Shown: positions 20,863-43,124, numbered from the stretch's first letter. The stretch: 64,000 nt of DNA from Obrimoposthia wandeli (GCA_977020255.1 CDROCS010002560.1:558001-622000), one strand, 5' to 3'. Numbers and translations: made by a program. The notes: generated by a model from the sequence alone, not told the origin.

Positions 20863-21904
20863 TGTTGGGTCTTTAATTAAAATTAAATTAATTAAGAAAG
20901 TCAATTTAAATTGACATTTTATAAACTAATCTAAAGTGCCCACAATTAGGGAGGTTTTTCAAATTTCAGCCTCCGACGGGTTGTTAGCCCGTTTCGCCCT
21001 GCCGGGCTCTTCAGGAAGGCGGCTATTTTTTGATAAGAAATAAAAAGTGGTTTTGACCACCAAAGATTTTCCGCCCAGTCTCCCAGCCTAGCAGCAGATC
21101 TTCGCTACCGGGATTTTGCGGATCGGGTTTTTGACAATCTGCCAATGTGTCCAACCGGCCACCCGACCATTCGCCATCACCGTCGACATAGTTCTGCACC
21201 CAGTCGCTATCTGCAGCCGATCTGATTTTCGCCTACCCAACCACCCAACTAACAATTCTTCACTTTGGCGACAGTACATGCCATTTACTCTCTCGGTCGG
21301 CCCTCTTTTCCCAATGCGGTCTCACCTTCATCTCTTTGCTGACATTAATTGGAAAGTTACGGTTTCTTTATTTCTATTTTGAATCCCCATTTTAAATGTT
21401 CTATTGTGTATCTACAATTCCCCGGATTCGCCCCTTTCTTTTTCTGTGTGTGCTTATTCAAATTTATCTATTACTTTAGCTGTTATGTTCGAATATTTGG
21501 TGTGGAAGTGCAATACCGGGCGACCGATTTCTATTGGGTTTGGCGTGATCTGTAGGCGAATCAACTTCTAGTGTCTCCAGTTGACATTTGGACGATTGCT
21601 ATTTATAGCAATCGTCGTGTCGATTTTGATAATAAAATTATTAGCAGTTAAAAATTTGTCTTATTGATTACAAATTATAACATTTGTTTCTACAAATAAA
21701 AATTCTTAATTTATTAACTTATCAATTGTATGGAAAATATATGATAAACACAAAACAAATTTACTTGGATTTTTGATCGTTCCTGATAAAAAGTATTTTG
21801 GAATTGGATTTTTGATCGCTCCTGTTGAACGAAACACAAAAAACAAATTTACTAGGATTTTTGATCGTTCCTGTTGAAAAGCAATATCCTCAAAAACTAT
21901 AACA
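20863..21904 (-). mobile_element. LTR-like unit A carrying a hammerhead ribozyme; 4-bp TSD TGTA
   Basis: Ends are TGTTGGGTC...CTATAACA, with TGTA at 20859-20862 and 21905-21908. The opposite TIR arm (~26790-26830) shows the empty site. Confidence 0.85.
20969..21020 (-). ncRNA. Type I hammerhead ribozyme (copy A)
   Basis: Minus strand GCCUUC-CUGAAGA-GCCC(GGCA)GGGC-GAAAC-GGG(CUAACAA)CCC-GUC-GGAGGC has the full core and three paired stems. Predicted cut at 20974/20975. Confidence 0.9.
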
Positions 21905-22494
21905 TGTATGTATATGTAAACATATTTGATTACTAGTAGATTAACAAATACATCAGATGACATCCCTTGCACGTATATAAAATAAAGTTTAATCATGAAT
22001 GTATGCATGTGGGTATGTTTGTATGTAAAGCTTAATCATGTATGTATGTGTAACTACATCATATCAATAAATTTGTTTTAATGCATCAATTCCAATGCCC
22101 GAAAATTCAAATATATGTTTGTTATGGTTACAAGTATTTGTGATTTTTGCTACATCATAACAAGATATATTTACTAAAATGTGGACATAACTTCATCTTC
22201 TCTTGTCATCTAATGTTTTCTAAAGAAACTATGTAATCTTAGATGTTAAACTGAAATTAAAAATAGATCAATATTCTACATGTTATTGATTACAGATATT
22301 AAATCTCGATTAAGGTATTGATATTTCTAATGTAGAATTGAAACTTGGAATATATATATCATAAAACTACTAAGGTTATTCATAATAATTTATCAATATA
22401 ACTTGTATTCATAGATTTTATCATGCTTACAAAGTGTTATGTATTACTATCATTAGAAAATTATAGCTAAAGTAGATATCAAATATCAAATATC

Positions 22495-22762
22495 AACCTT
22501 TCTCCACAACCAATTCTCCCGAGTACGCCAAGATCATTCCAAGGTCATTCCATTCTTTTGTTTAAATGCATCATTTTTGGTGCTTTTCAAAATTTCATAA
22601 TTTATTTTTGGCGCCAAAAATATTTTTGAAATTTTGAATTTGGCGCCAAAAATAAATTATGAAATTTTGAAAAGCACCAAAAATGATGCATTTAAACAAA
22701 AGAATGGAATGACCTTGGAATGATCTTGGCGTACTCGGGAGAATTGGTTGTGGAGAAAGGTT
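22495..22762. repeat. Perfect fold-back, ~124-bp arms with ~20-nt loop
   Basis: 22495-22618 is the reverse complement of 22639-22762, with no mismatch seen. Confidence 0.95.
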
Positions 22763-22840
22763 AGGGTTATGGGTATGGCTTAGGGTTAGGGCTATGGCTG
22801 GGGTTAGGGTTAGGGATATGGGCGTGGTTAGGGTTAGGGT
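22761..22840 (+). repeat. Degenerate telomere-like (TTAGGG)n tract
   Basis: GGTTAGGGTTATGGG..TTAGGGTTAGGG..GGGGTTAGGGTTAGGG..GGTTAGGGTTAGGG. Confidence 0.85.
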
Positions 22841-22963
22841 GCTTTATAATTTGAGAGTTTCATTATGTCTTATTCATATATCCTTATATAGAACTCACAC
22901 GAGATATAAACAAAATGAGTAATTATAACATACATTTATGAATACAACCAAACAAATCCTCAA

Positions 22964-22993
22964 CCAATCATGTGAGGTTAGATAGAATATAAA
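22964..22993 (+). promoter_or_regulatory. Putative CCAAT (22964) and TATA (22988) promoter of the central ORF
   Basis: CCAAT, then TATAAA ~30 nt before ATG 23020; AATAAA at 23540 lies just after the stop. Confidence 0.4.
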
Positions 22994-23019
22994 CAATTCA
23001 GCCATTATTTCTGATCACA

Positions 23020-23523
23020 ATGTTGATAAACATCGAGAAGAAGATAGCAATATCAGTGAAGAGGATCAATTCCATTGCATTGAAGAAAAGAAGCAAGAAA
23101 CAGTCTATGGATTTTATTAAACAATTAGATATCTTCAGTGATCTCATCAAATTGAAGAAACCGAAATTTCAAGATCCTTATCATAAATTCGTATGGGATA
23201 TGTATTTACTTGAAAATCCTATAACATACCACTTCTCCAATCATGTCAATGTAACGAAAATCAAGTTTGACTATATCATCAGAGATATCTATGAAGAAGA
23301 TGTTATACAATTGAATGAACTCATGCAACAATTGGATATTGGATATAAAATCCATAGAAATTCTATATTGGTGAGAGCTGATGAAGGTATTTTTGCAGAT
23401 TATTGGAATGTTGAAAAGGATATGAAAAATGGAAAATGGACTCTATTCATAATGATTCAAGGATTTATGACCAAATGTGATGGAAGTTTAAAACCTATAT
23501 GGAAGATTACGAAGGATGTATAA
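23020..23523 (+). CDS. Uninterrupted 167-aa ORF of unknown function in the spacer of the non-autonomous element
   Basis: Open, non-repetitive protein-like composition, flanked by TATA and polyA signals. It is the only long ORF between the arms. No family recognised with confidence. Confidence 0.55.
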   Translation: MLINIEKKIAISVKRINSIALKKRSKKQSMDFIKQLDIFSDLIKLKKPKFQDPYHKFVWDMYLLENPITYHFSNHVNVTKIKFDYIIRDIYEEDVIQLNELMQQLDIGYKIHRNSILVRADEGIFADYWNVEKDMKNGKWTLFIMIQGFMTKCDGSLKPIWKITKDV

Positions 23524-25019
23524 TGTTATAGAAATTAATAATAAATATTTATGTTTTATCTTACGAATTTATGTCCAAATATAGACATATGCACATGCAC
23601 CAACTTCCCTTGTTCTTGTTATCCAATTAGAAGCTTGCAATATTTAGTCAATACTTGCATCAACCAATCAGAACATGGACATCTTTACATATATTATGTG
23701 TAAATATAAATATGTTCAGCAACTCTCCATAAACATCTTAACCACCATGAGATTTTCCTCTTCTTAACCCTATAAAATAATCTATTTTTAGTAACATTGT
23801 ATCATCTATTCTTATTGGTTAATCTGAGTCTCAGTTTTATATAAACAAAGATATATTTAAATAAACATGTAAGCTGATTTATAGCAACGTCATCATATTA
23901 TTCATGGAAACTCAAGAAGAAAAATCCAATATTATGATGTCATTTTCCGGAATATCAATGGATCAATGTCTACCCAACTGAATTACAATGGAATATACAA
24001 GATTGCACCCTGTGGCTTAGTGACTTCTGTTTGGACTCTATGGAATTAACTAATAAAGGTACGTATTTTCTCCTTTATATTTATTAATATTTTATAAGAA
24101 GTTCGAAAGTTAAGGATATATTGATGCGAATATTGATATTTATTGAATTAGATGATTTATGAAACGCTAGTAATGAATAGTAATATCTTAATAAAATGGT
24201 GAGAAACTATGCTATCTTTAGAAATATTAAACCTAGCCCCTAGATTCAATAATCAGTAGCTACTTGATAAAATAGATTAATCAATAAAATAGTTATGATG
24301 AATTATTGTTAAGGTTTTATTAGGATTTACAACATGTGTTATGATATAGATGAAATATGTGTATTATCGATAATTTTGGTATAAGATTCTTTGTATGCGA
24401 GCTTGTATGATAATCAAAACATCTAAGTCTTCTCTATATTTAACTATATTATTCCATTTTATAGTTTAAATCTCAATGACACATTAGAAAAATCATTATT
24501 CCTATTATCAACCACTTTATGATGGTTGATGATAGTGAGATTAGATGTTGATAATATTGATAAGTTCAGTTTTTCAATAATCAATATGTATGGAAATATA
24601 TGAATTTATGGTATTTGGTAATTTCTCTGAAAGTTAGGGATGAAAGTTTTTGAAAGAAGATTCATGATAGAGATGTTAGAAGATATGGATAGATATGTCT
24701 CGATTTATTGATTATTAGATTCATTCTTATAAAATTTCCAATGTTTTCCTTTACACCCTAACCTGATTATCTAACTCAAAAGTCTTAATATCTTAGTTTT
24801 TACAACAAAATGTTTAAAGTTAAACAACTACAACGTTGAATATTTTAAACAACTGCAACGTAGAATATTTCAATCAATCAACATTGATGTATAAGTAATG
24901 TTAAATTATGTCTGTTATTTAAAAAACATCATTTATGAATGCTTTAATGAAAGAGGTAGGGTTGATATTGGTCTGATTCTATGCTATTCTTTCCTTAAAC
25001 CCTAATACTTGTTATATTT

Positions 25020-25440
25020 TTTCATCTTAAACCTCTTAACATCCATGAGATTATCGTAACTACCACGTTATTTTCCTCCTTAAACCTCTCAACTTCCATG
25101 AGAATTCCCTAACTACTGGAAGATTTCCCTAATTACCATGAGATTTCCTCAACTATCATGGGATTATGCTAACTTTCATGTTATTTTCCTCCTTGAACCG
25201 CTCAACTTCCATGAGAATTCCCTAACTACTACAAGATTTCCCTAACTTCCATTAGATTTTCCTATCATGGGATTATCCTAACTTCCACGTTATTTTCATC
25301 CTTACACCACTCAACTTCCATGATATTTCCCTAACTTCCACGTTATTTTCCTCCTTAAACCATTCAACTTCCGTGAGAATTCCTTAACTTCCACGTTATT
25401 TTCCTCCTTAAACCACTCAACTTTCACGTGAGTTCCCTGT
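25020..25440. repeat. Degenerate ~40-bp tandem repeat (TTTTCCTCCTTAAACCACTCAACTTCCATGAGAATTCCCTAACT-like)
   Basis: Repeated units read directly. Confidence 0.8.
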
Positions 25441-26999
25441 TTCTCTTCTAGAAGCATCTAAATATTGTAAATTTTCTGAACATATCATTAATTTCCTGAA
25501 CACATCAATACTTTTAGAACATAATATAGAACATATAGTTGTTATTATGATAAACAATATCGATGTAAAATTGAAAAAGATAGAGATGTAATGATTAATA
25601 ATAATTAGAGTTTTGTATATACCTTGTATTTCTAGTAAGTATTCAGACATACATGCATACACACACCCAATAGTCTCTATGTTCTATTTTTTTTCTTGTT
25701 CTGTCAGCTTGTAAATTTTTGTAAGTATTCATACATACACACATATTACTATAGTCTAAGTTTAATATTCCCTGCTCAAGCAATCTACCAACAATCAGAA
25801 GACAGTCCAGTGGATTACTATACTCCAATTTCTCTCAGCTAAGTTTACTATGAGTTTGCTTGTTCAATCAATCTTCCACCAATCAGAATACACTCCAGTG
25901 GATTACTATTCTCCGTCCTTCTAGGTATGTTTACTATATTTGCTATACGTTGATTCTACCCCGTTGATATTTAGTATCTACTTTAGCTATAATTTTCTAA
26001 TGATAGTAATACATAACACTTTGTAAGCATGATAAAATCGATGAATACAAGCTATATTGATAAATTATTACGAATAACCTTAGTAGTCTTATGATATATA
26101 TATTCCAAGTTTCAATTCTACATTAGAAATATCAATATATTAATTGAGATTTAATATCTGTAATCAATAACATGGAGAATATTGATCTATTTTTAATTTC
26201 GGTTTAACATTTGAGATTACATAGTTTCTTTAGAAAACATTAGATGAGAAGAGAATATGAAGTTATGAAGAGATAAGATGAAGTGATGTCCACATTTTAG
26301 TAAATATATCTTGTTATGATATAGCAAAAATCACAAATACTTGTAACCATAACAAACATATATTTGAATTTTCGGGCATTGGAATTGATGCATTAAAACA
26401 AATTTTTTGATATGATGCCAGAAATCGTCTCCTCCCTAAAGCCAAGCGCCGGCTGGTCGCCGTAGTACTTTCTTTAGAAAAGTGGATGAATATGGGAATT
26501 GCTGCGATTTATTGCAGGAATTAGCCGTTGACACCCCGAAATCCCGGGACACTCTAGTTATGATGGTGATCAATGGTGTAAAAACTGGCGACTAACCCCT
26601 CGTCATGGTTTCGAACTGACGATTAACTGCCATTTATAATTAGACGTGCTTATGGTGAAAGGTCAACACATACATACGTGATTAAGCTTTACATACAAAC
26701 ATACACACCCGCATACATTCATGATTAAACTTTATTTTATATACGTCCAAGGGATGTCATCTGATGTATTTGTTAATCTACTAGTAATCAAATATGTTTA
26801 CATATACATACATACATACATTTAATTCTGTTTCCAAGTGTCAACATCTGTCTAATTATTCACACACACACATGTATGGGTGATGTAAGCAAATGGAAAA
26901 CATATTAGATGGAATTAACATAGCTTAATTTAGGTAAATAAATTTTGTAAATTTTTTATTACTTTGTTTTAAAAGAAATTGATTTTGAAATAATAAAGT

Positions 27000-27790
27000 T
27001 TTGAAGAAAATAAGTTTTTGAGGAAAATAGGTTTTTGAAGAAAATAAGTTTTTGAAGAAAATAAGTTTTTTGTAGAAAATAGGTTTTTGAAGAAAATAAG
27101 TTTTTGAAGAAAATAAGTTTTGATAAAAAAATTTCAGAAGCAAAAATTTTCATGTACAAAAGTTTTTGGTGAAAATGATGTACAAGTAATTTAAAAACTT
27201 TTTAATTTTGGCGCCAAAATGTTTTGAAAATTTAAACAAAAATTATTGAAAAAATAATTTTTAAACGTTTTGGAAATAATAAATTTTTGAAGGTTTTGAA
27301 CCCTTGAAGGTGTACCCTCGAAGGTCTAATGAAAGTCAGATCAATGCTATTAAATATATAACTTTGAAAAGTAGAAAAATACATTTTTGAAGGGTTTGGA
27401 CCCTTAAAGGTTAAGCCTCAAAGGTCTGAGTAAGTTTTGATCAAGCCTATTATATATAACTTTGAAAAGTAGAAAAATAAATTTTTGAAGGTTTGAACCC
27501 TTGAGGGTTCACTTTTGAAGGTTTTAGACCCTTTGAGAGAACCCTATTCGAGTAACCATATTAAAGAATAAGCTCAAAGTAGCAACTCGAAGAATCAGCA
27601 ATAATAAGTACCTTAAAAGAAGCAACTCAGAGAATTTCCTTAAAAGAAGCAACTCAAATAACTTCCTTAAAAGAAGCAACTCAAATAACTTCCTTAAAAG
27701 AAGCAACTCAGATAACATCCTTAAAAGAAGCAACTCAAATAACTTCCTTAAAAGAAGCAACTCAAATAACCTGCTCAAAGAAGATCCATC
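27000..27790. repeat. Tandem-repeat block present only in the right arm: ~17-bp AAAATAAGTTTTTGAAG array, ~100-bp units and 27-bp AAAAGAAGCAACTCAAATAACTTCCTT array
   Basis: Arrays at ~27000-27130, ~27280-27530 and ~27605-27775; absent at the corresponding left-arm position (~20664). Confidence 0.85.
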
Positions 27791-27932
27791 AAGAGTGAGT
27801 AACCATGTGCTCTTAGTCGTTGTCTTGAAAGACTCATGTCCTCAACATGTGAAAAGAAATAATTCACAAAGGGACAAAGCACGTCACGTGTACAAATATT
27901 GCAAATAAGTGTAATTATTTGTAATTATTTGT

Positions 27933-28006
27933 AAATCACACACTTACACAGATGTGATGAAAATGTCACGTGACATTTTCATCACATCTGTGTAAGTGTG
28001 TGATTT
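27933..28006. repeat. Perfect 74-bp palindrome within the right arm
   Basis: AAATCACACACTTACACAGATGTGATGAAAATGTCAC|GTGACATTTTCATCACATCTGTGTAAGTGTGTGATTT. Confidence 0.95.
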
Positions 28007-28999
28007 TCTCTTCCCTACTGTACACTTCAATACAAGGCAGAGATTTTCTCTGCCTTGTATTGGACTATGTGTGCGGTGAATGTAAACAGTTCTGCTGCTG
28101 AATTGGATTTAGCTGCAGTATTCAGGTAAATTTTTATTTTATTTATATTTTATGCTGCTGCTGCTCCCAATATCGAGTAAGGTTTATTTTTGTTGATTTA
28201 ATTTGATTATATATGTTTAGAAAACACAATAGAAGAGCAAATATATATTGATTATTGTCCTTCTATTGTGTTTTTTCAAACATTATTTGAATAATCATCT
28301 ATTTATAATTGATTAATAATAATCCTTTTAGATGATGTGGTTAGATGTCTATCTTTCATGACATGAGCTCATAGTGAGCACATGGGCTCATGAATCTTAT
28401 GATAACTTTGGGCTCATGGTGAGCACATGAGCTCATAATCTTGAAAATAACCTTGGGCTCATGGTGAGAACATGAGCTCATAACCTTGATGATAACTGTG
28501 GGCTCATGGTGAGCACATGAGCTCATAATCTTGAAAATAACCTTGGGCTCATAGTGAGCACATGAGCTCATAATCTTGAAAATAACCTTGGGCTCATAGT
28601 TAGCATATGAGCTCATGACCTAGACCTTGACCTCATGAGGACATGATCTAGATTTTTCCCATGACCTCATGAGGACATGCCCTTGAACTTATGAGGTCAT
28701 GACCTAGATTTTTCCCATGACCTCATGAGGTCATGACCCACATCTTGACCTCACCGTGACCTTAAGTTCACCTCAAAATTTTTGTCCTCAATTTGACCTG
28801 AACTTGTTCTCAGGGGGGGCTTTGTGCCAGAAGTGCCACATCTACTTACTGAACTTGATAATGTTTTTACTGAAGTTGCTAATTTGATTAGAAAAGGTAA
28901 TTCAAATGAAACCCAAGGAGGTAGTGGATTTAAACGTAAAAATAAGCAAAAAATCAATATAAACAAACGTAAGAAAGTTGAAGGAACAATATTTGCAAA

Positions 29000-30050
29000 A
29001 TGAGTTGCGCCAAAACCGAATTGTGTATTTTTGATAAACCACTTCCACAAGTAGTTGTAGATAATGCTTCCTTTGAAGAAATATTTCTAGTTAACTCTGT
29101 TTCAGGAACCACTTTAACCTATTTAGAATTTAATATTAATGGTTCCAATAGCGAGTATTTAGATTTGAAGGATACTTTGCTTTATGTTCAAATAAAAGTA
29201 TTAAATAGGGATGGTACTAATTTAGAGGAAAATGCAGATGTAACACCTGTAAATTATCTCTTTAATTCTTTATTTAGTGATGCCATTGTTACTCTTAATA
29301 ATGTCAAAATTGAAGGTGGAAATTCTTCCTATGCTCATAATGCTTTGATTGAAAGTATTTTGAATTATAGTACTGATACTCAAAATACTAATTTGGCAAC
29401 CATTGGTTATGATAAAACGGTTGCAACTCGCAAATAATGGATTGCAGGTTCTAAAGCTTACGAAATGTGTGGGTCTTTGAAATTGAATTTCTTTGAACAA
29501 CCGAAATATTTAATTCCCGGTGTTAATGTACATCTTCGTTTGAAACGCAATAAATGGAATTTTTCTTTGATAAGCACAGACGTTCTAGAACCTAAACTTG
29601 ATATTTTGGATGCAAAATTGTATGTCCGAAGAGTTAAAACCGAACAATCAGTTTTAATGGCATATAATATAGGAATGGAAAAAACAATGCTTGTTATCCT
29701 ATTAGAGAAACTAAACTTATATTCTATTCTTTAGGTACGTATACACAAGCTTTTAATAAGGATCAAATTTTTGGTGATGTAAGATTACCGAAATTCATTT
29801 TAATTTCTTTTCACAAAACTGCAAAGTTTCTAGGAAATTATACAACAGATGCAACTCAATTTGACAATCTTAATGTAGGTTCAGTGACACTTTCAAGAAA
29901 TACTGATTATCGCGAAACAAATAAAACAGATTTCGAAGGAAACGCTTATGCTTTCAAAGCAGCTTTAACACATCCTACTACGGTGCTTATATACGAAGTA
30001 TTTGATTCGGAAATACAAATCAATAAAAACAGAACTGTCATATTATAGAA
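29000..30050 (+). pseudogene. Polinton major capsid protein (double jelly-roll), decayed
   Basis: MSCAKTELCIFD..LEFNINGS..YLDLKDTLLYVQIK..NSLFSD..FFEQPKYLIPGVNVHLRLKRN..LYVRRVK..VLIYEVFDSEIQI; contains stops, frameshifts and an apparent internal deletion. Confidence 0.9.
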
Positions 30051-30149
30051 TGAAGTAAGATATTTTTAAAATTTATATTTATTAATTAATATATTATAGA
30101 ATGAAGTAAGATATTTTTAAAATTTATATTTATTAATTTTTATTTAGTT

Positions 30150-30696: not shown

Positions 30697-32770
30697 TTAA
30701 ATTCGGAAGTGTCCATAAGCTAGGCTAGCGTTCTTTTCTACCCAAAAGCGCTTGTCGTCATTACTACTCAAATCGATTTTTGTTGATTTATGAGAATACA
30801 GTTGATGGGCTCTTGAAATAAATCTAGTTTGCTCAACGCTTTCAATACACCCAGTATCATAAACTTTCCGGTAGGCCTCATGTGTAAGATTGGTTCTTCC
30901 CACACCCTTTGCTCTCGTTGAACATGTATAATTAGATGCATATAAACTGTAGCATTTAGGGAGTAGGAAAATACAATCATCATACGAAACCTGTCCCTCG
31001 CTTTCATCCTTAAATTTCCTGATAATATCCTTTAAACTCATATAGTGTAGAGGATGGTTAGCGGAATATTTATAGGTATCTAATAAGTTGTCCCTAAACA
31101 TTACCGGTAATAATTGATTATCTAAACTAACATTTTTACATTCTAAAAAGAAAGAGTCAGTGTCCCCAGCTGCGATTTTGATCTCACAATTGAATTCTTG
31201 TTGATATTTCTCTAATTCTATGTATTGAAGCTCGTACATTCTGATTTTAGAAATGTCTAAAACCGTTTGACCCATATAACTCGGTCGATCGATACAAATA
31301 CTCTGTTTTCCTAATAACACTGCTACCAAGTCATCTGCAATTGTAAAACTAGGCTTGAAGTTGTACTTGCTAGTATATGTTATTAGTTTACGCTCATAAT
31401 TGCAAAATCGTAGACAAATACGTTTCCGCAAGTCCTCTACAGTTTTTCCAAAGAGACTATTACTTTTTAACTTGTAAAAATCTCGATCGAATTTGCTAGT
31501 GGCCAAATTACGTTTTCTTGAATTCTTCTCAATATAGTCTTTAAACACAAAGTTTTGACTGAAGCTTATAGCACGATGAATTCGAGTAACTTTCGCTCCC
31601 AACTTTAAGTAGAATTGAAGAAGCCGCCAATGCACAGCATAATTCAACTTGTCTTCATGTGTTAACAATAATTTCTTAACCTTTGAATAAGATGAGCATT
31701 GATGAACAGGCGCTACTGGAAGATCATCTAATTTATCATGCACATTGGAAGGGATTGTTAAGTCAAGGTCAACCAAATAGCCGACGTCTGATGAAACTGT
31801 ATCAACAGTAGCCAAATATGTCATCAACTAATTCAACTCTTCCTCATCATAAACCCACTTAAAGTTGGCATGAGGTAGAGGTTGAGTAAGCGCCCACCCA
31901 TACAAATTATTAATATCGATGTACAGAATCTCCGTGAATTGATTTTTGACAACATGATGTTTGTTGACAAAAGCCATTCCACTGAGTATACCATAATCAT
32001 ACATTTGATATATCGCGGGATCTTGCAGTAACTTGATATTAATTTTAAGAGTTTTTATTGCTGTTGCCCATGAAAGACCAGGTAAACTAAAGAAATTCAT
32101 GGGATCTAGTCCATATTCTGCTAAAGATTTTACACAAAAGGACTCAAAAACATCAGCTAAACAATAAATGTCTAACTTCATATAATAAAGCATATATTCT
32201 AGAAGATTTCTTTACCCCTTTTGCCAACACGCTATACAGAAAGCAAAAGTTATCACTGTTTTGTACGTTAACAATGGAACGTGAAAGTTGAAGAGATCTA
32301 GGTGAAGGAATGTATGAACTCCTTGAAAGATATATCATGTCAGTGAAGTTTGTTAGAACAAAGCTAAAATCGTGAATTCTAACAAGAGTCCATCCACTAC
32401 TTAACTCGCTATAATTAACAATTTTTTCATCTAGGTTTCTTCCAATTTCATTTACATAATTATCATAGAAAACAGTTGCTTTATGTGAAATTACCCAAGT
32501 TTTAACTCCTCATTGATATTTTTAAACTGCACTGTTGCGCAAAATTGAACCTTATCATGTCCTAATTTAGTCACTTCTGATTTTAAAAGACTTTCAATAT
32601 TTGAATCTACACCTACGTTTAATAAAATTGTATTTCCTAATGGCACCTTAACTATAACATATTTATTATTTAGGTGATACTCTACAGTAGCACCGTTTTC
32701 CCTACGTTTCTTTGGTGGGACCTTATTAAGAAATTGGCCTCGCCTCTTTCTTCCGTTTGTCGCTGACAAA
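30697..32770 (-). pseudogene. Protein-primed family B DNA polymerase (pPolB), internally deleted
   Basis: LDIYCLADVFE..YIDINNLYGWALTQPLP..KLKSNSLFGKT..AAGDTDSFF..PKCYS..DDKR; N-terminal QNSDNFCFLYSVLA is joined almost directly to the late exonuclease motif. Confidence 0.92.
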
Positions 32771-35620: not shown

Positions 35621-35830
35621 TCTTAGGGAGCACTATGAGATTTTCAATTTTAAAAGGTGTTAAATGGGGTTAATTAGTTTTTAGGGTGTTGGGCGGGTTG
35701 GGGAGGTAGAAAATTTCACTCCACACACACATACACGAAACGTCCCTCCACACACATACACGGTTTTAAAGGACAGTGGTAGCTCCCCGGGCGGGGGGAG
35801 GCTGTATTAGACCGGACACATCCCCCTACT

Positions 35831-36350
35831 AACCATCTAGCCGACTTAGCAGATAAGATCTACAATGTTAACAATACAGAACATGTTAGCGCAATAAACA
35901 TTCAGAAACAACAAATTCAACACCCAGAACCAGGCAATATACTAACCAGAATACTTGAAAATTTAAACGATAGTATACAAGCAAATAACTAATTACTACA
36001 ACAACTATTTATATTTACTAACAACAATAAAACACAAAACAACAACAATTTCGACAACAACTTAACTAATGAACACCGCCACAACCCAAGAGAAGATTCG
36101 AGAAACAACGCAAGAAACAATTCACCCCATTTCAGACCCAATCATACATATAACACAACACAATACCCCAAAAATAATTCACCACATTCCAGACACAACA
36201 AACAACCCACTCCAGAAATACATCACCATATTCCAATACAAACAACAATCACACAAGCAACACATACGAAAATGATATATTATGCTATTACCATAAAACA
36301 TAAGGATCCTGAGCATACAAACGCGAAAAACCATATGCATATTCAAAAAA
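35831..36350 (+). mobile_element. Ty3/Gypsy gag C-terminal remnant abutting the Polinton terminus
   Basis: Starts NHLADLADKIYNV directly after CTACT, continues N/Q/H-rich, and ends LCYYHKT*GS*AYKREKP (degenerate CxxH..G..A..C..PC gag motif). Confidence 0.6.
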
Positions 36351-36410
36351 AACATGAGACCAGGTACTTCTGCATCAAATTATGCTGGTCTAATCATCAT
36401 ATTCAAATTC

Positions 36411-36626
36411 AGTGTCGTTTCTAACTCATTGATTGAGAAGACTTTAACCCTTGACCCTTCTCTACCTAAGTCATGAGCTAATGAGCTATGAGTTGAACCC
36501 TTACCATCAAGGGTCAAAGTGAAAGTGTCTTGACCTTTGACCCCTGATGACAAGGGTTCAGCTCATAGTTCATTAACTCATGACTCAAGAGGGAGTCTGT
36601 TGAGCCAATGAGTTACAAACGACACT
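36411..36626. mobile_element. 216-bp fold-back MITE-like element
   Basis: TIRs AGTGTCGTTTCTAACTCATTG / CAATGAGTTACAAACGACACT with nested internal inverted repeats; no TSD seen. Confidence 0.65.
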
Positions 36627-38689
36627 TTATACTACTTATTTTATACTTAAATATTTTCATAAATTTCAAATTTGGGCTCTAACACATGGTATTATTCCTA
36701 GATACATATATAGATACCTTAAGTGCTTCAATAGTATTCAAATATTTAACAAAAGAATTCCTTCTGTACTCGTAAGACAAAAATGATCATTTAGGTTTAT
36801 TTCTGGCATACATGTTTTGGCTCATATCTTCAGATAGGAAGAATACTTCATGATCGTACAAAAATAAATGACCATACTGGTATCTTGAGCAGAAGGGAAA
36901 TAATAGCATCAACATTTGATCTTTCATGACTGAAGTAGTCAAAATCTCAAATAAGCCTTATTTCTTGTCTTTGAAGTTTATGTATGATACTGTTTGTTTA
37001 AAGATTCAATTTTTTCTGAAACTTTTGTGGTTTGTGTATATTTCGTAGAAACCTTTTAATATGTCCTTCTCTGATTTTTTAGAAAGCTCATTCAGCTGTA
37101 CTGGTAATTTCCAAATAATCACAGTTTGACTTAAACTGATTTTGAAGACATATAACTTATAAATTGTATGCTATCCTAAAATCGGATGCATTTGATATAA
37201 ATTTTATACTGTGTGAAAACGTTGGAGGTTACCCAATACGGGTTTGTTTTTCAAAAATATTCTACAATTCATGTTAATCCATTTTTTGCAGTTTCTTAGT
37301 ATGTTGAATTACAATATTTTACTAAATAAAATGTTAAATTTCTTTAAAACAAATTTTAAACAATTTACTAAAATTTACTAAAATTTAGTTTTTAATTTCT
37401 GTATTATTTTTTATTTGGATAATATAAAAAGTAAAAATAAAACGAGTAACGAATCATTCAATTTCAAATATTCAATATTTTAATTGATATAATATTATGT
37501 ATATATATGATTTTATATATATAATTTATAATTTGTTTAAATTCTTCAAATTTAAACATTTTAAATGTAAATTTTTAAAAAAAATTAGGCGTTTAAAACA
37601 TATTATTTAAAGTTTGATACATTAATTATGTTTTTAATGAATATTTAAATTCATACTAATCATATGAAATAAATTATTTTATGTTTGAAATATTAGTTTA
37701 GAGTTTCTGTTATAAAAGGTATTTTACTTTAAATTTATAAATTTTTTTTAAGCATACTAGAGTTTTTTTAATTTTTTTTTTTAAAAAATGGATGTTCTAA
37801 AACTATGGCTTTTTAACATAAATGAAATATAATTAAATGAATACCAGGAATCTAACAAACTATAGATTAAATTATAATACAAAAAAAAATAAAAAATACA
37901 GTAATCGTCGGAATGAAAAGGGGATTCTCAACTAATGACAAGATTTTATTGTGCTGTCAGCTCTTTGTAAATGTGATAAAATTTATAATTAAATTTTAAT
38001 AAATTTATTTCATTTAATATTACACTAAAATATATCAAATCTTTAGAAATAAAACTTGTTACTTCAACAGTATTCATATTGTTTCCAAATGCACAATACT
38101 TTTTTTGGTCAAGAACTCTTGATGTAGATTCACTCCTTCAAAGCATATATGGACCCCAATTATTTAAATAACAACTACCATTTTTAATATAGTAATAATT
38201 ATTTTGAATTCTTTTAGTAACAGTCAAATTTTTGTGATCTTTGAGTTTTATTTTTATTTATAAATTCTTAAATGCGAAGTGTGATGACTACTTCTATGTA
38301 TGAGATTGTTTTCAATCAAAAATATATTTCTTTACTTGGTTTTCATAAACTTATATTTTTTCTTTATGTATATATTGGGGTGTTGGGTTTTAACAAAAAT
38401 ATTTTCATATTCGGCAGATATAAATGAAAACTGAATTATTTTTTAAAACAAAAATTCATATTAAAACGTAAATTAGTAAATTAATAGTTATGATAAAGGC
38501 AAATAATAATCACCAAATCAATCTATAACTCAACAACTGAGGCACCCATCAAGTAAAAAATATATCTTAATGAATTTAACAATTCAATTAACATTTAGAA
38601 TGAATAAACTAAAGTTCACTTTTAAATTAGTGTTACATTTGATAATTGTTATATTTTTAATGGATTATTATTTTCAACTAATTCATTTG

Positions 38690-38930
38690 TAAACATTTCT
38701 GTCTTCAGTAATAACAGCAACAATAATAATCAAAAATAGCAATAAAAATAATGATCAGTAAAAATTCTGTTTTAATCAATAAATGAAATAATAATTTCTG
38801 TTTTCAATAATAACAGTAATAAATATGGTCAGCAATAATTTTTGTTTTCCGTAATAACAGTAATAATTATGGTAAGCAATAATTTCTGAATTCTGTAATA
38901 ACAGTAATAAATATGGTCAGCAATAATTAT
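38690..38930. repeat. Degenerate AATAACAGTAATAAATATGGTCAGC-like tandem repeat
   Basis: Several imperfect copies read directly. Confidence 0.6.
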
Positions 38931-40564
38931 TCTTTTTGTTGCAATTTACGAATTGGTTTTAGAAATTATATCAAATCTCTCTATACTAAAAAAATTTATA
39001 TTTTTATTTCAGTCGTAAGTGACATTATATAAATTTGCAGACACACATACTTAAACACACATATGGACGCACTATACAGATAGAGGCAGTAAAATAACAT
39101 ATGTGTGTTTGTGGTGCACTTAAAATTGCACTGTAAATAAAATCGATAATGGATGCAATAATTCCTTTTGTGTTATCTCCTTCATCGCGGGCAATTTTTC
39201 CATCGCGAAGCAAAAGATAAAATCTGGTCATCGCTGTCTTAAAAAATCGCTTTTCGACTGTGGGCACTTTGATAAATTAATTTAAATCTTCAATTGGCAT
39301 ATTTCAATTGCCAACATTAGTAAATATAGTTAGTTTAATGTTTACTTTAAAAAATTAAAATAATTACTACTCACTGTTAGTTTCTAAAAAATTCAAAGTT
39401 TATCAACAAAATAAAACACTTGTAGATCAGCTTTTGTGTAGAAACTGCTGTACATGTATACATTTTCTTATTTTGTTAGAATCACGAAACTGTTATTAGA
39501 GTAACGGCAAATACTATTCCACAAATAGCGGTTTCCTAACATTGCTTCGATAAGATCAATGTAGTAAGTTTGAATTTTGATGAGATATCATGGGATTTTG
39601 TAAAAAAATCAGATCATAGTTGAGATGAACACAAAATTACTTAGAATCAATTATTGGTTTAATGTATCTGATGATATACTGTCGGAGAAAACTATGGTTT
39701 TCCAGTTTGTGAAATTGATGTAAGGTTAACTGGTTCTTCAAATCAAGTGTAGCTTATTTCCTTTTTCATGAGCTGTCAATGAAAATAAAATTCCACATGG
39801 CTCAATTGTCAACTTTCTCTTTGCCAAATGCCTCCATTTCTTTGATTTTCTTAAACTGTTTTTTTTGTAATATTATGAAATCTTTATCCTCTTATATGAC
39901 TTGCCTTCAAAATTGGTTTTCATAGAATTTGTTTTTTAAAATATCTATTTACTGCTTTACTTGTTTCTATAGAATGTTTCTCTTAAAAATTATTCGACAA
40001 TGAAATTTAACTAAATATATTGAAACCCGGTGAATAAACCCCACCAATTTTAACCAAAATTCGTGTCAAAATTTTGGCTTTCTTTAAACTTATTTAAAAT
40101 ATGAAACCTGAAGATTATATTTTAGTGGGGTTTAACAGTTTGTAAAGCAGAAATATTTATTTACGAAAATCAATGTTTTGAGATATTTTTGTTATGATTT
40201 ATTATTTTTCAACATGGTAAATATTAATCAATTTTATTGATTAATTTTGACATCTTTGATTTTCATCAAATTCGTTTAATAACTATATTTTCTGAAGTTT
40301 ATACAAAATTATAAATGTGTTATCTCTGAATGGTTTTATTATATTCTCCAAATTAAATATTTATTTTTGTAAGCATAAAATTTTCCAATTCATATATTTG
40401 TAAGCATAAAAATTTTCAATTCATATATTTGTAAGCATAAAAGTTTTCAATTCATATATGTTGGGTCTTTAATTAAAATTAATTAAAATAAATTAGTCAA
40501 TTTAAATTGACATTCTTTAAAATTATCTAAAGTGCCCACAATTAGGGAGGTTTATCAAATCTCA

Positions 40565-40616
40565 GCCTCCGACGGGTTGTTAGCCCGTTTCGCCTTGCCA
40601 GGCTCATCAGGAAGGC
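40565..40616 (-). ncRNA. Type I hammerhead ribozyme (copy B)
   Basis: Minus strand GCCUUC-CUGAUGA-GCCU(GGCA)AGGC-GAAAC-GGG(CUAACAA)CCC-GUC-GGAGGC; stem II carries a compensatory C-G to U-A change relative to copy A. Confidence 0.92.
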
Positions 40617-40874
40617 GGCGAAAAAAGCGGTTGATAAAAGGGATTCTTATCATAAAAATATTACCGCCCAGTAGCAGCGACCTATTCCCTTCATGATCAT
40701 CCGGAGAGGCAACAACCTTCTATCATCCTCTCGGCAACATTCAATCATCCCATAATCCCTACTAATCTCCCCGCCGGCCAGGCGCTACCTGCCGTGGACT
40801 TTCAGCCAGCAGTGCAGACAGCGACTACATCTCGATGCAATTTCCCTCTGGCTGAAAACCAACAACGTGACAGC

Positions 40875-41305
40875 GAATTGCGGGAACAAATGTCACCCAG
40901 AAACAGCCTCATCCACGTGTACCCAGAGCACAGTTTGAAAGAAGCGGCTGACATCATACAAAGCCACAATATCCACAGATTGCCGGTCCTCGACCCCAAT
41001 AACGGCAATGTTCTCAATACTGTCACTAACTACCAGATATTCCATTTTTTCTACAGGAAAATTATGGTGCAGGGCAAATTTTGGAAATAACAAATGGACG
41101 CAAATGAGAGAGAGAATATGTAAAAATGTGTTGTTTATTTTACAATTATCAGAAGCCAGCGTGTTTCACCAATCCGAGGTTCATGCATGAGACCCCCTTC
41201 ACTCTTGGCCTCGGCTGCTATGACGACCGAATCGCCACTGTACGTCCGGCCCAGACGGTGTTCGAGGCTCTGACTATTTTCAGCAACACACACACTTTCC
41301 CTCTG
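40875..41305 (+). pseudogene. PRKAG: Captured AMPK gamma-subunit (CBS-domain) fragment: two exon pieces and an 86-nt intron
   Basis: LIHVYPEHSLKEAADIIQSHNIHRLPVLDPNNGNVLNTVTNYQIFHFF, then intron GT 41067..AG 41152 (phase 0), then KPACF..LGLGCYDDRIATVRPAQTVFEALTIF. Collinear with AMPK-gamma IHRLPVIDP..GN..KPEF..IGTY..IA.V..V..AL.IF. Confidence 0.8.
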
Positions 41306-42135
41306 TGAATTTATAGATCAGTCTGCTGATCCTATACAGACAACTCCAATTTAATTTTATCGTAAAACATTTCGATTGGTCGATATTACCAGATAAAAAT
41401 ACATGTGTCTATGTCCCTATATTGGCATGCCCTCGCCTGTCCCTCTCACCAATGTCACTGCACACCCCTGCCTTCTCCTTCAGTCAATCTGACATTTGGG
41501 CGATTGCTATTTATAGCAATCGTCGTGTGGATTTAGATCAATCAATTCTCATTTTTACAAATTTGTCATTTCAGTTTTCATTAACACAATTATTATTGCC
41601 AAGAATTTGAAATTTATATACAATTTGACTTGAAATTTTGATTATATTTTATGCCCACGAAGTTGAAATTTATATCCAATTACAAATTATAACATTCAGT
41701 TTTCATTAACACAAAAAATATATATCAATTAGAAAACGATTCAATTGGAATTTATCGGGATAACAATTTAAACATTTAAAGAGTTTTAATTATCAAAGAG
41801 AAGAAAAACGATTCAATTGGAATTTATCTGGATAACAATTAAATATTATTGGAAAATTTATTGATCAGTCATTACTAATATAACCTTCGGATCAGTCTTT
41901 TCAATTATAACATATATTTGTAAGCATAAAAGTTTTCAATTCATATATTTGTAAGCATAAAAGTTTTCAATTCATATATTTGTAAGCATAAAAGTTTTCA
42001 ATTCATATATTTGTAAGCATAAAAGTTTTCAATTCATATATTTGTAAGCATAAAAGTTTTCAATTCATATATTTGTAAGCATAAAAGTTTTCAATTCATA
42101 TATTTGTAAGCATAAAAGTTTTCAATTCATATATT

Positions 42136-43124
42136 TGTAATGATGAAAATTTTTGTAATACTGAATATTTAATGATCATTCTGAACGACGATTGCCATAA
42201 ATAGCAATCGTCCAAATGTCACGCCAGTCGGGATCAGCCACTGGTCATGGAGGGAGGCGCTGTGGCACTGTGCGAATGGAACGACGATTTCCATTGCCCA
42301 AATGTTAAACGACTATTTTAAGACGGCAGCTGCAGATTGTGATAGTAGTGGCTGTTTGGGTGACGAGGTCAGGGTTGGCAACAGTGAAAGCAACAACCGT
42401 TTGATAATAACTCTCTGTCTCTGACTTTTTATTATCATTTGAACACATTCACCTAGCAGTGTGCATCCCAAATATCCAACCGCTGCACACACACTGGACA
42501 AATCTGGGCAGAGAGGAGAAGTACCGATATTTCCCGGCTCTGCACACACTCACATGTGCAGCCGGGAAAATCTACCGCCTGTCGAACTCTGGGCAGGCGG
42601 AAAAATTTTAATTAAAACATACACACACATGTGCACAATATATAAGTAAGTGAGTGAGTAGGGAGAGTGAGTGAACAAGGGATTGAGTGAGCGATTGAGT
42701 GAGTAGTGAGAGTGAGTGAGTGAGTTGAGTGATGTGTTAATGTTGAGTGAGTGTGTGTGTGTGTGAATGGTGCACTTGCGCACACTAACACCACATGTCG
42801 ACGATATTCGTCGGCACATGAAAGGGGGAATCTTTCCCTCTTTTTTATTATTGTTATCTCTGGCTTCGCGGAATCCACCGCGAAGTTAGAGATAACAAGC
42901 CATCTCCCTGATGAGCCCGGCAGGGCGAAACGGGCTTTTTTCTCGTCGGAGATTGAATATACAAAATGCCAAAGTGTACAATTTAAAATCGGAACTTTTC
43001 CCTAATTAAGGAAAGTTCCCAATTAATTTTTAATTAATTAATTCCCTTTTTCCTTTTATTTCTTTAAAAATTTTATATTTTTATTTTTCTTTTTTAAACA
43101 AATAGTTAATATATTTTCCCAACA
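42136..43124 (+). mobile_element. LTR-like unit C (inverted relative to A and B) carrying a hammerhead ribozyme
   Basis: Ends are TGTAATG...TTCCCAACA (reverse complement begins TGTTGGG, as in A and B). It shares the 26-bp palindrome (~42187-42212). Flanks are TATT and TATG (3/4 TSD match). Confidence 0.75.
42902..42953 (+). ncRNA. Type I hammerhead ribozyme (copy C)
   Basis: AUCUCC-CUGAUGA-GCCC(GGCA)GGGC-GAAAC-GGG(CUUUUUU)CUC-GUC-GGAGAU; stem I differs in sequence from A and B but still pairs. Confidence 0.9.

What the first reader, a model, noticed from the sequence alone, without database searches (positions are those of the whole stretch)
20863..43124. Family of LTR-like, hammerhead-bearing cassettes with conserved ends and swapped cargo (candidate metazoan LTR-type retrozyme)
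Seen: three units (A 20863-21904, B 40459-41912, C 42136-43124 inverted) share TGT..ACA ends (TGTTGGG at one end), a 26-bp palindrome and a full type I hammerhead 100-170 bp from the TGTTGGG end. The 550-870 bp between palindrome and ribozyme show no similarity between copies. A and B have exact 4-bp TSDs, with the empty sites reconstructable inside this window. Established: TG..CA ends with 4-bp TSDs are Ty3/Gypsy integrase signatures. Plant retrozymes are LTR-type with type III hammerheads, whereas animal type I hammerheads are mostly known from Penelope-like pseudo-LTRs and short non-LTR retrozymes. Inference: these are solo LTRs, or complete minimal elements, of an integrase-mobilised animal family that carries a self-cleaving RNA and exchanges its internal segment.
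Basis: partly seen in the sequence, partly recalled or inferred. Interest (0 to 1): 0.88.

Follow-up and report, generated by a model that had tools for sequence, protein, structure and literature searches.

The report
Hammerhead-bearing mobile cassettes with swapped cargo
Three copies of a small non-coding mobile element in an unidentified animal genome share a self-cleaving hammerhead RNA, a TATA-centred palindrome and LTR-like TG..CA ends, but carry unrelated inner segments, one of them a captured piece of a host gene. They may be the first LTR-type ribozyme element seen in an animal, but that is not shown.

Summary
Units A (20863-21904), B (40459-41912) and C (42136-43124, inverted) share four things:
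- a TGTTGGG terminus;
- a complete type I hammerhead (15/15 pairs in all copies, 3 compensatory pairs);
- a 26-bp palindrome inside a 37-nt near-invariant block;
- an ACA far end.

The 370-820 bp between these modules are unrelated.

A and B are proven insertions. A's empty site survives as a 96% paralogue at 26666-27002, and B interrupts a 31-bp satellite. The duplicated stretch is at most 6 nt, which gives 4 bp only if the ends are read as TGT..ACA. C has no clean duplication.

New points:
- B's cargo is two consecutive exons plus an 86-nt intron of an AMPK-gamma-like CBS gene, antisense to the ribozyme.
- On the ribozyme strand the palindrome centre reads TATAAATA. Conservation stops at a TCA 26 nt downstream, so the cargo may be what gets transcribed.
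- The last ~220 bp of A and B are also unrelated to each other.

Best reading (about 0.45): solo LTRs, or LTR-like units, inserted by a retroviral-type integrase. No paired LTRs, PBS, PPT or coding partner could be found or searched for. A Penelope/TPRT-mobilised element (0.25) and a DNA-level capture element (0.15) remain open. No other copies were found in any public collection, and the host organism is unidentified.

The parts
20863..21904 (-). Unit A, 1042 bp. The strand given is the hammerhead-sense strand. Flanked by TGTA (20859-20862 and 21905-21908).
   Evidence: The empty-site paralogue at 26666-27002 shows it is an insertion.
20969..21020 (-). Type I hammerhead of A. Predicted cleavage is after C20975.
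   Evidence: Rfam RF00163, 24.3 bits, E 0.0034. Canonical minimum-energy fold. Pair counts.
21071..21078 (-). CTGGGCGG motif (ribozyme strand) that opens the conserved 3' module of A.
   Evidence: Shared with B at 40664-40671, and with C at 42589-42600 in a form carrying a 4-nt insertion.
21079..21581 (.). Cargo of A: 503 bp, 46% GC, non-coding, unique in the window.
21582..21618 (-). 37-nt near-invariant block of A containing the 26-bp palindrome (21591-21616). On the ribozyme strand its centre is TATAAATA, and the conserved block ends at a TCA 26 nt downstream.
21683..21904 (.). Terminal 222-bp AT-rich segment of A, after an internal ACAAATTATAACA (21670-21682). It holds three ~46-bp repeats and ends ATAACA.
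26666..27002 (-). Paralogous empty site of unit A, reading (ATGT)4 ATATGTAAAC. It lies in the right arm of a large inverted duplication.
40459..41912 (-). Unit B, 1454 bp, inserted in a 31-bp satellite. Flanked by TATA (40455-40458 and 41913-41916).
40565..40616 (-). Type I hammerhead of B. Predicted cleavage is after C40571. Helix II carries a C-G to U-A compensatory change.
40672..41489 (+). Cargo of B: 818 bp holding a fragment of an AMPK-gamma-like CBS-domain gene. Exon to 41066, GT..AG intron 41067-41152, exon 41153-41305. The fragment is sense on + and so antisense to the hammerhead.
   Evidence: Pfam CBS E 6e-8. Best PDB matches are AMPK gamma-1, E 1.4e-8. Both exons align collinearly to the same homologues.
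41490..41526 (-). Conserved block of B with its palindrome (41499-41524).
41695..41912 (.). Terminal 218-bp segment of B, after an internal ACAAATTATAACA (41682-41694). Not similar to the corresponding segment of A. Ends ATAACA.
42136..43124 (+). Unit C, 989 bp, inverted relative to A and B and head-to-head with B across 223 bp of satellite. It lacks the ~220-bp terminal segment and has no clean TSD.
42187..42212 (+). Palindrome of C (centre CATAAATA). A second partial copy without the TATA lies at about 42276-42314.
42222..42588 (.). Cargo of C: 367 bp, 49% GC, non-coding. It is followed by the CTGGGCAGGCGG motif (42589-42600) and about 300 bp holding a (GTGA)n-like repeat and two strong hairpins.
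42902..42953 (+). Type I hammerhead of C. Predicted cleavage is after C42947. Helix I has two compensatory pairs relative to A and B.
   Evidence: Rfam RF00163, 32.4 bits, E 1.6e-5. Pair counts.
41913..42140 (.). 31-bp satellite, 7.4 identical copies, between B and C. The same satellite at 94% lies at 40362-40458. It gives B's empty site.

Best explanation
A, B and C are copies of one family of non-coding, non-autonomous mobile elements. I think they are most likely solo LTRs, or LTR-like units, of a retroelement inserted by a retroviral-type (DDE) integrase.

Read on the hammerhead strand, each unit has three modules:
1. A 5' module. It is AT-rich and has short tandem repeats in A and B. It ends in a palindrome whose centre is TATAAATA, followed by 18 conserved nt that run up to a TCA 26 nt from the start of the TATA. 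This looks like a TATA-plus-initiator promoter.
2. A variable segment of 370-820 bp that starts where conservation stops. It is GC-richer than the genome. In B it is a genomic piece of a host CBS-domain gene in antisense.
3. A 3' module. It starts at CTGGGCGG, continues with a local hairpin and a monomer-competent type I hammerhead (helix III of 5 bp), then 106-171 nt of AT-rich tail ending CCCAACA.

Proposed working. The promoter module transcribes the variable segment. The hammerhead then cuts the RNA 112-177 nt before the element's end. In a full element with two such repeats, the two cuts would release a unit-length RNA, as in plant retrozymes. Integrase recognises the TG..CA tips and makes a 4-bp staggered cut, preferring alternating pyrimidine-purine targets (TGTA, TATA).

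Shown:
- insertion with a short duplication;
- the module structure;
- an intact ribozyme with covariation;
- unrelated cargo;
- a host gene fragment with its intron.

Inferred:
- LTR identity and integrase;
- promoter and start site;
- self-cleavage in vivo;
- any circular RNA.
For: - A is absent from a 96%-identical paralogous site, and the filled site has at most 6 extra nt.
- B splits a satellite with 6-7 duplicated nt.
- With the conserved tips taken as TGT..ACA, both give 4 bp (TGTA, TATA). Plant retrozymes likewise show 4-bp TSDs (PMC4918200).
- The 7-nt tip TGTTGGG is kept in C although the neighbouring ~100 nt are unrelated. By my own estimate from base frequencies, the chance of that 7-mer in C's tail is about 0.006. 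This argues for end recognition by an enzyme.
- The ends share only 4 nt in inverted orientation (TGTT..AACA), as in LTRs.
- There are no internal terminal repeats.
- The hammerhead forms 15/15 pairs in all copies, with 3 compensatory pairs. Structures slid by 1-3 columns pair only 31-52%.
- The conserved block ends exactly at TCA, 26 nt after the start of the TATA.
- Enhancer-like tandem repeats lie upstream.
- Degenerate BEL/Pao-type retroelement coding remnants (Pao peptidase; one integrase zinc-finger hit) lie elsewhere in the window, so LTR retroelements have been present in this genome.
- Solo LTRs carrying hammerheads are common in plants.
- LTRs that carry small-RNA modules are known in animals (PMC10886601).
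Against: - No paired LTRs, PBS, PPT or coding partner are linked to any copy. The flanks are microsatellite, satellite or host sequence.
- The duplication is equally well read as 5 or 6 nt with other tips. The 4-bp reading needs the target to be A-TRTA-T in both cases.
- C has no clean duplication.
- A transcribed segment of 0.5-1 kb inside an LTR, replaced wholesale between copies whose ends are 90% identical, is unusual for LTRs.
- Known animal type I hammerheads belong to Penelope-like elements and their derivatives.
- There are only three copies, all from one window, and none was found elsewhere.
Confidence: 0.45

Rival explanations
1. The units are non-autonomous derivatives of Penelope-like elements, or of another target-primed retroelement. 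On this view they are dispersed relatives of animal non-LTR retrozymes. They are copied from the hammerhead-sense RNA, whose conserved 3' module with ribozyme and CCCAACA end is what the reverse transcriptase recognises. Template switching supplies the variable 5' parts.
For: - Animal type I hammerheads are, as far as published, tied to Penelope-like elements and retrozymes, with the ribozyme near the 3' end.
- Penelope-like elements prefer (TA)n and AT-rich targets and often sit as head-to-head pairs with one 5'-truncated copy. Here the targets are (ATGT)n and a TA-rich satellite.
- B and C are head-to-head, and C lacks the outer ~220 bp.
- All three 3' junctions read CCCAACATA, which could be target microhomology.
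- C's satellite junction has a 7-nt overlap (tttgtaa).
Against: - No RT or GIY-YIG domain was found in any ORF of 72 aa or more.
- There is no 30-40-bp tail and no pseudo-LTR redundancy.
- A and B have the same short duplication and the same defined far end (ATAACA), with an internal copy of that end. That is not expected from random 5' truncation.
- The hammerhead has a 4-bp helix II and a 5-bp helix III. Penelope min-hammerheads have a long helix II and a minimal helix III.
- B and C differ throughout, so they are not products of one insertion event.
- A promoter-like module upstream of the putative start would be lost on simple retrotransposition.
Confidence: 0.25
2. The units are non-autonomous DNA-level elements moved by an unknown transposase. 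Their interiors were replaced by filler or captured DNA during repair, as in Pack-type elements. The hammerhead is a passenger, or a processing or terminator signal, in the terminal region.
For: - Conserved terminal regions with abrupt loss of similarity and unrelated interiors are the typical signature of class II deletion-and-filler derivatives.
- B's cargo keeps an intron, so it came from DNA or unspliced RNA.
- The ~220-bp end segments are also swapped, with an internal copy of the end motif.
- The duplication could be 6 bp.
Against: - There are no terminal inverted repeats beyond 4 nt and no shared subterminal motifs at the two ends.
- From my own knowledge of transposon classification, no known eukaryotic cut-and-paste superfamily combines near-absent TIRs with 4-6-bp duplications.
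- Helitrons capture genes but make no duplication.
- Covariation in the ribozyme argues that it is selected, not a passenger.
Confidence: 0.15
3. This is not a mobile family. The shared blocks would be leftovers of local segmental duplication or chance matches.
For: The window is rich in duplications and satellites.
Against: - A is precisely absent from its paralogous site, and B precisely interrupts a satellite.
- The motif counts are far above shuffled expectation.
- The shared blocks keep order and orientation in three places with unrelated flanks.
Confidence: 0.02

Closest known systems
Plant LTR retrozymes (Cervera, Urbina and de la Pena 2016, PMC4918200)
   Same: - Non-coding, non-autonomous elements with a hammerhead inside a repeat that has TG..CA-type ends and 4-bp duplications.
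- Many copies are solo LTRs.
- Interiors are highly variable.
- Little sequence is shared apart from the ribozyme and the end boxes.
   Different: - The plant ribozyme is type III; this one is type I.
- Plant LTRs are about 330 bp; these units are 1.0-1.45 kb.
- Plant elements have a PBS (tRNA-Met) and a PPT and occur as pairs giving 600-1000-nt circular RNAs. None of that is seen here.
- The host here is an animal.
Animal non-LTR retrozymes (Cervera and de la Pena 2020, PMC7229834; Li et al. 2026 preprint, 10.64898/2026.07.22.740005)
   Same: - Type I hammerhead with a 6-bp helix I and a 4-bp helix II.
- AT-rich and non-coding.
- Found in animals.
   Different: - Those are tandem arrays of 150-400-bp units with larger duplications, and mostly a 1-2-bp helix III that needs dimers.
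- These are dispersed single units with a 5-bp helix III, short duplications and defined TG..CA tips.
Pseudo-LTRs of Penelope-like elements (PMC4209133, PMC8557442, PMC11167929)
   Same: - Hammerhead near the 3' end of a repeat.
- AT-rich or microsatellite targets.
- Inverted neighbouring copies.
   Different: - No RT/GIY-YIG ORF, tail or partial-tandem structure here.
- Different ribozyme architecture.
- The maximal duplication is the same short length (6 nt) in A and B.
LTR elements whose LTRs carry small-RNA modules (Cassandra, Helenus, Ajax; PMC10886601)
   Same: Non-autonomous LTR elements, also found in animals, whose LTRs embed a functional RNA-gene-like module. Solo LTRs with short duplications are frequent.
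   Different: Their module is a tRNA- or 5S-like Pol III unit, not a ribozyme. Swapped cargo is not described for them.
Gene-fragment-capturing transposons (Pack-MULEs, Helitrons). Comparison from my own knowledge, not tested here.
   Same: Conserved ends around unrelated interiors that include intron-bearing host gene fragments.
   Different: - Pack-MULEs have long TIRs and 9-bp duplications.
- Helitrons make no duplication and end in a hairpin plus CTRR.
- Neither carries a hammerhead.

Membership tests
Hammerhead ribozyme, type I (Rfam RF00163) | Conserved core CUGANGA ... GAAA ... UH, with three helices and helix I open | tested here: met
   All core positions are present in A, B and C. 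15/15 pairs form and 3 pairs are compensatory. The minimum-energy fold of A and B is the three-way junction.
Hammerhead ribozyme, type I (Rfam RF00163) | Score at or above Rfam's gathering threshold (34 bits) | tested here: not met
   24.3 bits (A), 32.4 bits (C), and B not listed. The shortfall comes from the 11-nt insertion in loop 3 relative to the model, not from the core.
Hammerhead ribozyme, type I (Rfam RF00163) | Self-cleavage at the predicted site | not testable with these tools
   Needs an in vitro transcription and cleavage assay.
LTR of an LTR retroelement (solo LTR) | 5'-TG ... CA-3' termini with a short inverted match | tested here: met
   TGTTGGG..ATAACA in A and B; TGTTGGG..TTACA in C. 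The boundary can shift by 1-2 nt within the duplicated stretch.
LTR of an LTR retroelement (solo LTR) | Target-site duplication of fixed length, 4-6 bp | tested here: met
   A: at most 6 nt against the paralogous empty site. B: 6-7 nt against the satellite. The exact length is unresolved. C matches only 3 of 4.
LTR of an LTR retroelement (solo LTR) | Other copies occur as direct pairs around an interior with a PBS and PPT (and gag-pol in the autonomous partner) | not testable with these tools
   None in the window. No eukaryotic genome collection is on hand, and pattern scans of the viral, metagenome and prokaryote collections found no copy.
LTR of an LTR retroelement (solo LTR) | U3-R-U5 signals (promoter, start site, 3'-end signal) | tested here: inconclusive
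   TATAAATA plus a TCA 26 nt downstream on the ribozyme strand. No clear poly(A) signal. Orientation is not established.
Plant-type LTR retrozyme | Type III hammerhead in ~330-bp LTRs, two per element, delimiting a 600-1000-nt RNA with a PBS and PPT | tested here: not met
   Type I ribozyme, units of 1.0-1.45 kb, one ribozyme per unit, no PBS or PPT.
Animal non-LTR retrozyme | Tandem repeats of 150-400 bp, each with a type I hammerhead | tested here: not met
   Single dispersed units; no tandem array of the unit.
Penelope-like element pseudo-LTR | Linked RT plus GIY-YIG ORF, partial-tandem structure and a 30-40-bp tail | tested here: not met
   Neither domain appears in ORFs of 72 aa or more. 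There is no terminal redundancy. This holds for this window only; the rest of the genome is untested.
Penelope-like element pseudo-LTR | Min-hammerhead architecture (long helix II, helix III absent or 1-2 bp) | tested here: not met
   Helix II is 4 bp and helix III is 5 bp with a 7-nt loop (definition).
Cut-and-paste DNA transposon (Pack-type) | Terminal inverted repeats | tested here: not met
   Only 4 nt (TGTT/AACA). BLAST finds no inverted match between the ends.

The most novel reading that the evidence does not exclude
An animal has an integrase-mobilised, LTR-type counterpart of plant retrozymes. Its repeat is a self-contained expression cassette: a TATA promoter, an exchangeable transcribed segment and a monomer-active type I hammerhead. 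The cassette picks up host sequences, here an intron-bearing AMPK-gamma-like fragment in antisense, and would express them as ribozyme-terminated RNAs.
Probability: 0.25. Interest if true: 0.85.

Novelty: new variant of a known kind. Interest (0 to 1): 0.6.

Why it matters
The literature I could search describes animal hammerheads only in Penelope-like elements and their tandem non-LTR derivatives, and LTR-type retrozymes only in plants. A dispersed animal element with LTR-like tips, a short duplication of equal maximal length in two copies and a monomer-competent hammerhead would show one of two things. Either ribozyme-bearing LTR elements arose twice, or they are older than thought.

It would also link self-cleaving RNAs to gene-fragment capture. 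The module layout gives directly testable predictions: the transcript start, the cleavage site, and circular or cyclic-phosphate-ended RNAs.

If instead the family proves to be Penelope-derived, it is still an unusual non-tandem, cargo-swapping form.

Tried and rejected
- **Rfam.** At gathering thresholds the whole window gave no hit. Only E-value mode recovers A and C.
- **Fourth hammerhead-like match.** The match at 53950-53973 has a broken core and no helices. It is chance.
- **Search for more copies.** The palindrome and ribozyme patterns found nothing in viral contigs. The ribozyme pattern found nothing in metagenomes. The palindrome pattern gave 15 prokaryote-like metagenome hits with no flank similarity. 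Prokaryote genomes gave four unrelated bacterial hammerheads that happen to share helix II.
- **Host identification.** The UCH ORF gave one weak fungal hit. The BicD exon gave at best 82-86% over about half its length, with named hits from rotifers, arthropods, molluscs and vertebrates. Cluster members carried no names. The contigs fetched (L020, L021) share only 73% DNA identity in one exon. PolB relatives reach at most 56%. The host stays unidentified.
- **Satellite derived from the element's end.** Rejected; the alignment scores are within shuffled expectation.
- **Homology of the ~220-bp end segments of A and B.** Rejected; the score is about one standard deviation above shuffles.
- **PBS or PPT next to outer or internal ends.** No TGG-type site. 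Only weak A-rich runs lie before the internal TGTTATAA.
- **C/D-box snoRNA at C's end.** E-values of 0.6-6, and the feature is absent from the homologous region of A and B. Treated as chance.
- **tRNA genes.** None.
- **Second exon of B's cargo.** It gave no AMPK-gamma match against PDB. It was confirmed only by collinear matches to homologues of the first exon.

Full report
**1. What is there**

The window is AT-rich (32% GC) and comes from an animal. It holds a multi-exon Bicaudal-D gene at 44.9-60.7 kb and a UCH-type peptidase ORF. The species could not be identified.

Pairwise BLAST shows:
- A and B share their first 161 bp at 90.7%.
- A and B share a 79-bp stretch around the palindrome at 82%.
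- A and B share an 18-nt stretch containing ACAAATTATAACA.
- C shares only the hammerhead region (80-91%) and the palindrome block (97% with A over 37 nt).
- Nothing else matches, and no further copy or cargo copy exists in the window.

**2. The ribozyme**

A strict core pattern finds A, B and C and one chance near-match, against 0.03 expected. The near-match at 53950 has no hammerhead features.

Rfam's type I model aligns A (24.3 bits) and C (32.4 bits) end to end, but below the 34-bit gathering score. The gathering-mode scan of the whole window is empty. The deficit is due to a long loop 3.

Measured against the canonical structure:
- All 15 pairs form in all three copies.
- Two pairs of helix I (C against A and B) and one pair of helix II (B against A and C) changed on both sides.
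- Slid control structures pair only 31-52%.
- Helix I is 6 bp, helix II is 4 bp with a GGCA loop, and helix III is 5 bp with a 7-nt loop.

The literature describes most animal type I hammerheads as having a helix III of 1-2 bp and needing dimers. It describes Penelope min-hammerheads as having a long helix II. This ribozyme should therefore be able to act alone, which fits one ribozyme per unit.

The minimum-energy folds of A and B are the three-way junction. In longer contexts each copy has a non-conserved hairpin just upstream. A and B also have a competing GGAGG/CCUCC hairpin downstream.

**3. Module map, read on the ribozyme strand**

*The 5' module.* A 37-nt block is nearly invariant in the three copies. 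It holds the 12+2+12 palindrome, whose centre reads TATAAATA (CATAAATA in C). The alignment stays conserved for 18 more nt and stops exactly at ..ATGTCA. The A of that TCA lies 26 nt from the first T of the TATA.

Upstream there are about 60 nt of weaker similarity. In A and B this is preceded by an internal TGTTATAATTTG, and then by a further 222 or 218 bp that start with TGTTAT at the element's tip. These outer segments have tandem repeats (3 x ~46 bp in A, 2 x ~72 bp in B). They are not alignable between A and B.

C ends close to where A has the internal motif.

*The cargo.* A has 503 bp, B 818 bp and C 367 bp. All are 46-49% GC against 32% for the window, and they are mutually unrelated. 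A and C show no coding signal.

*The 3' module.* It starts at CTGGGCGG (CTGGGCAGGCGG in C). Then come 50 nt with a hairpin, or about 300 nt in C with a (GTGA)n-like repeat and two strong hairpins. Then come the hammerhead and a 106-171-nt AT-rich tail ending CCCAACA.

Between A/B and C the tail is unalignable except for the terminal 7-mer and one 9-mer.

**4. B's cargo is a host gene fragment**

The + strand ORF 40794-41090 has a CBS domain (Pfam, E 6e-8). Its best solved relatives are AMPK gamma-1 chains (E 1.4e-8).

A library-wide search gave 217 relatives. In 49 of them a second piece (41153-41305) aligns directly after the first. For example, residues 3-59 then 65-107 of P0255, and 168-219 then 222-261 of P0278.

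The 86 nt between the pieces (41067-41152) start GT and end AG, and both exon edges are in phase 0. So the cargo is a genomic, intron-bearing piece of an AMPK-gamma-like gene. It lies antisense to the hammerhead.

The capture was therefore from DNA or unspliced RNA. If the element moves through hammerhead-sense RNA, the intron would not be spliced out.

**5. Proof of insertion and the duplication**

*Unit A.* Joining A's flanks gives a sequence that matches 27002-26666 on the other strand at 94-96% right across the junction. The flanks belong to a large inverted duplication (19765-22489 against 28850-25964), and only the left arm has A.

The empty site reads (ATGT)4 then ATATGTAAAC. The filled site has 3.5 units on one side and 2 on the other. 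At most 6 nt (ATGTAT) are duplicated, assuming the microsatellite itself did not change.

*Unit B.* B interrupts a 31-bp satellite whose unit is known from ten other copies. Seven nt (CATATAT) occur on both sides, and the first C can belong to the element, which again leaves 6 (ATATAT).

This requires the target to have been A-TRTA-T both times. That is plausible for an enzyme that prefers alternating pyrimidine-purine sites, but it is not forced. Readings of 5 or 6 bp with tips shifted by one base fit equally well.

*Unit C.* C abuts the satellite on one side only. With TGT..ACA tips its flanks match in 3 of 4 positions (TATT and TATG on the + strand). Other registers give 3-5-nt matches in this TA-rich context. 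I treat C's duplication as unresolved.

C may be truncated, or the very recent expansion of the satellite (7.4 identical units) may have overwritten its end.

**6. What kind of element**

*For a retroviral-type integrase, meaning a solo LTR or LTR-like unit:*
- The tips are defined and conserved, even where the neighbouring sequence is not.
- The inverted match at the ends is only 4 nt.
- The maximal duplication is the same short length (6 nt) in the two testable copies.
- The targets are alternating pyrimidine-purine.
- The size is within the LTR range.
- The layout is TATA plus enhancer-like repeats.
- Degenerate BEL/Pao-type retroelement coding remnants lie elsewhere in the window.

Plant retrozymes are a direct precedent for hammerheads in LTRs, with 4-bp duplications and many solo LTRs. 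Animal LTR elements that carry small-RNA modules in their LTRs are also known.

*Against it:*
- No pair, PBS, PPT or partner was seen.
- The wholesale replacement of a 0.4-0.8-kb stretch inside an LTR is unusual.

*The Penelope-type alternative:*
- It has the strongest prior, because published animal hammerheads belong there.
- It fits the AT-rich targets and the head-to-head B/C pair.
- However, the window has no RT or GIY-YIG domain in ORFs of 72 aa or more.
- It also has no tail or partial-tandem redundancy, the ribozyme architecture is different, and both ends are defined.

*A DNA-level capture element:*
- It explains the mosaic best.
- It lacks terminal inverted repeats.

My weights are 0.45 for the LTR reading, 0.25 for Penelope/TPRT and 0.15 for a DNA-level element. 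The remainder is unassigned.

**7. How it may work (inference)**

The promoter-like module would start transcription at the TCA. The RNA would then begin with the cargo and run into the 3' module, where the hammerhead cuts after the GUC. The cut lies 112-177 nt before the element's end.

For a solitary unit this yields a cargo RNA with a 2',3'-cyclic phosphate end and a short 5'-OH tail fragment. It may also help terminate transcription before the flank.

For a full element with two repeats, two cuts would free a unit-length RNA that a ligase could circularise, as proposed for plant retrozymes.

B would express RNA antisense to an AMPK-gamma-like gene.

None of these steps is shown. The strand that is actually transcribed is unknown, and the palindromic TATA could work in either direction.

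**8. Search for relatives**

Exact-pattern scans found no member of the family in viral contigs, metagenome contigs or prokaryote genomes. No eukaryotic genome collection was available. Copy number, partner and taxonomic spread are therefore unknown.

Three copies in 64 kb suggests an abundant family. It may be catalogued in a repeat library that I cannot query.

**9. Verdict**

I rate this a new variant of a known kind (hammerhead-bearing non-autonomous mobile elements), with interest 0.6. The rating is held down by the missing genome-wide evidence and held up by four points:
- the clean empty sites;
- the covarying, monomer-type ribozyme;
- the promoter-cargo-ribozyme layout;
- the captured host gene fragment.

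Noticed in passing
window 30697-32193 (-), 12766-12999 (+), 17693-18522 (+): Maverick/Polinton-like remnants. A protein-primed family B DNA polymerase ORF has a GDTDS motif and PF03175 relatives at up to 56% identity. There is a weak A32-like ATPase hint, and an integrase core plus chromodomain. Parts of the 12.8-13.8 kb region are repeated at 16.5-17.8 kb.
   Followed up: partly
window 7876-8313 (-): Pao/BEL retrotransposon peptidase (PF05380, E 4e-33) lies in a degenerate stretch with strong negative GC skew (6-12 kb). One ORF in the batch scanned (position not reported) hits an integrase zinc-binding domain. No LTR pair was found around this stretch.
   Followed up: partly
window 19765-22489 vs 28850-25964: A large inverted duplication at 81-96% identity, with a 268-bp near-perfect palindrome at 22495-22762 next to the left arm. 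The right arm has extra insertions (about 27003-27791 and 26418-26665). The left arm starts with a cluster of ggtcatgacctcatgaggtca-type palindromes (19.85-20.1 kb). Its nature is unknown; it could be a foldback element or long TIRs.
   Followed up: partly
window 40362-40458 and 41911-42140: A 31-bp satellite. The copies to the right of B are 100% identical (7.4 units) and those to the left are 94%. This suggests very recent expansion on one side, which may have removed C's outer end.
   Followed up: partly
window 42132-42203 (+): C's outer end weakly matches four C/D-box snoRNA families (best 26.2 bits, E 0.58), with AUGAUGA and CUGA boxes. The homologous regions of A and B lack the boxes, so this is probably chance.
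   Followed up: partly
window 42276-42314 and 42645-42766: C has a second partial copy of the palindrome block, lacking the TATA centre, about 100 bp inside its cargo. It also has a (GTGA)n-like microsatellite and two very stable hairpins (z = -7.5) between the CTGGGC..GCGG motif and the hammerhead.
   Followed up: partly
L016 (Dehalococcoidia MAG contig CAXXBX010000061.1), 465-7382: Six hammerhead-core matches lie within 8 kb of a bacterial MAG contig, three of them with the same helix II sequence as here. The flanks show a different topology, so the shared helix II is coincidental.
   Followed up: no
window 2698-4035 (-): A 445-aa single-exon UCH-type ubiquitin hydrolase ORF with a long acidic D/E run. 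It has almost no close relatives in the 5.8-billion-protein collection (one fungal hit, E 2e-4). The host lineage therefore seems poorly sampled.
   Followed up: no
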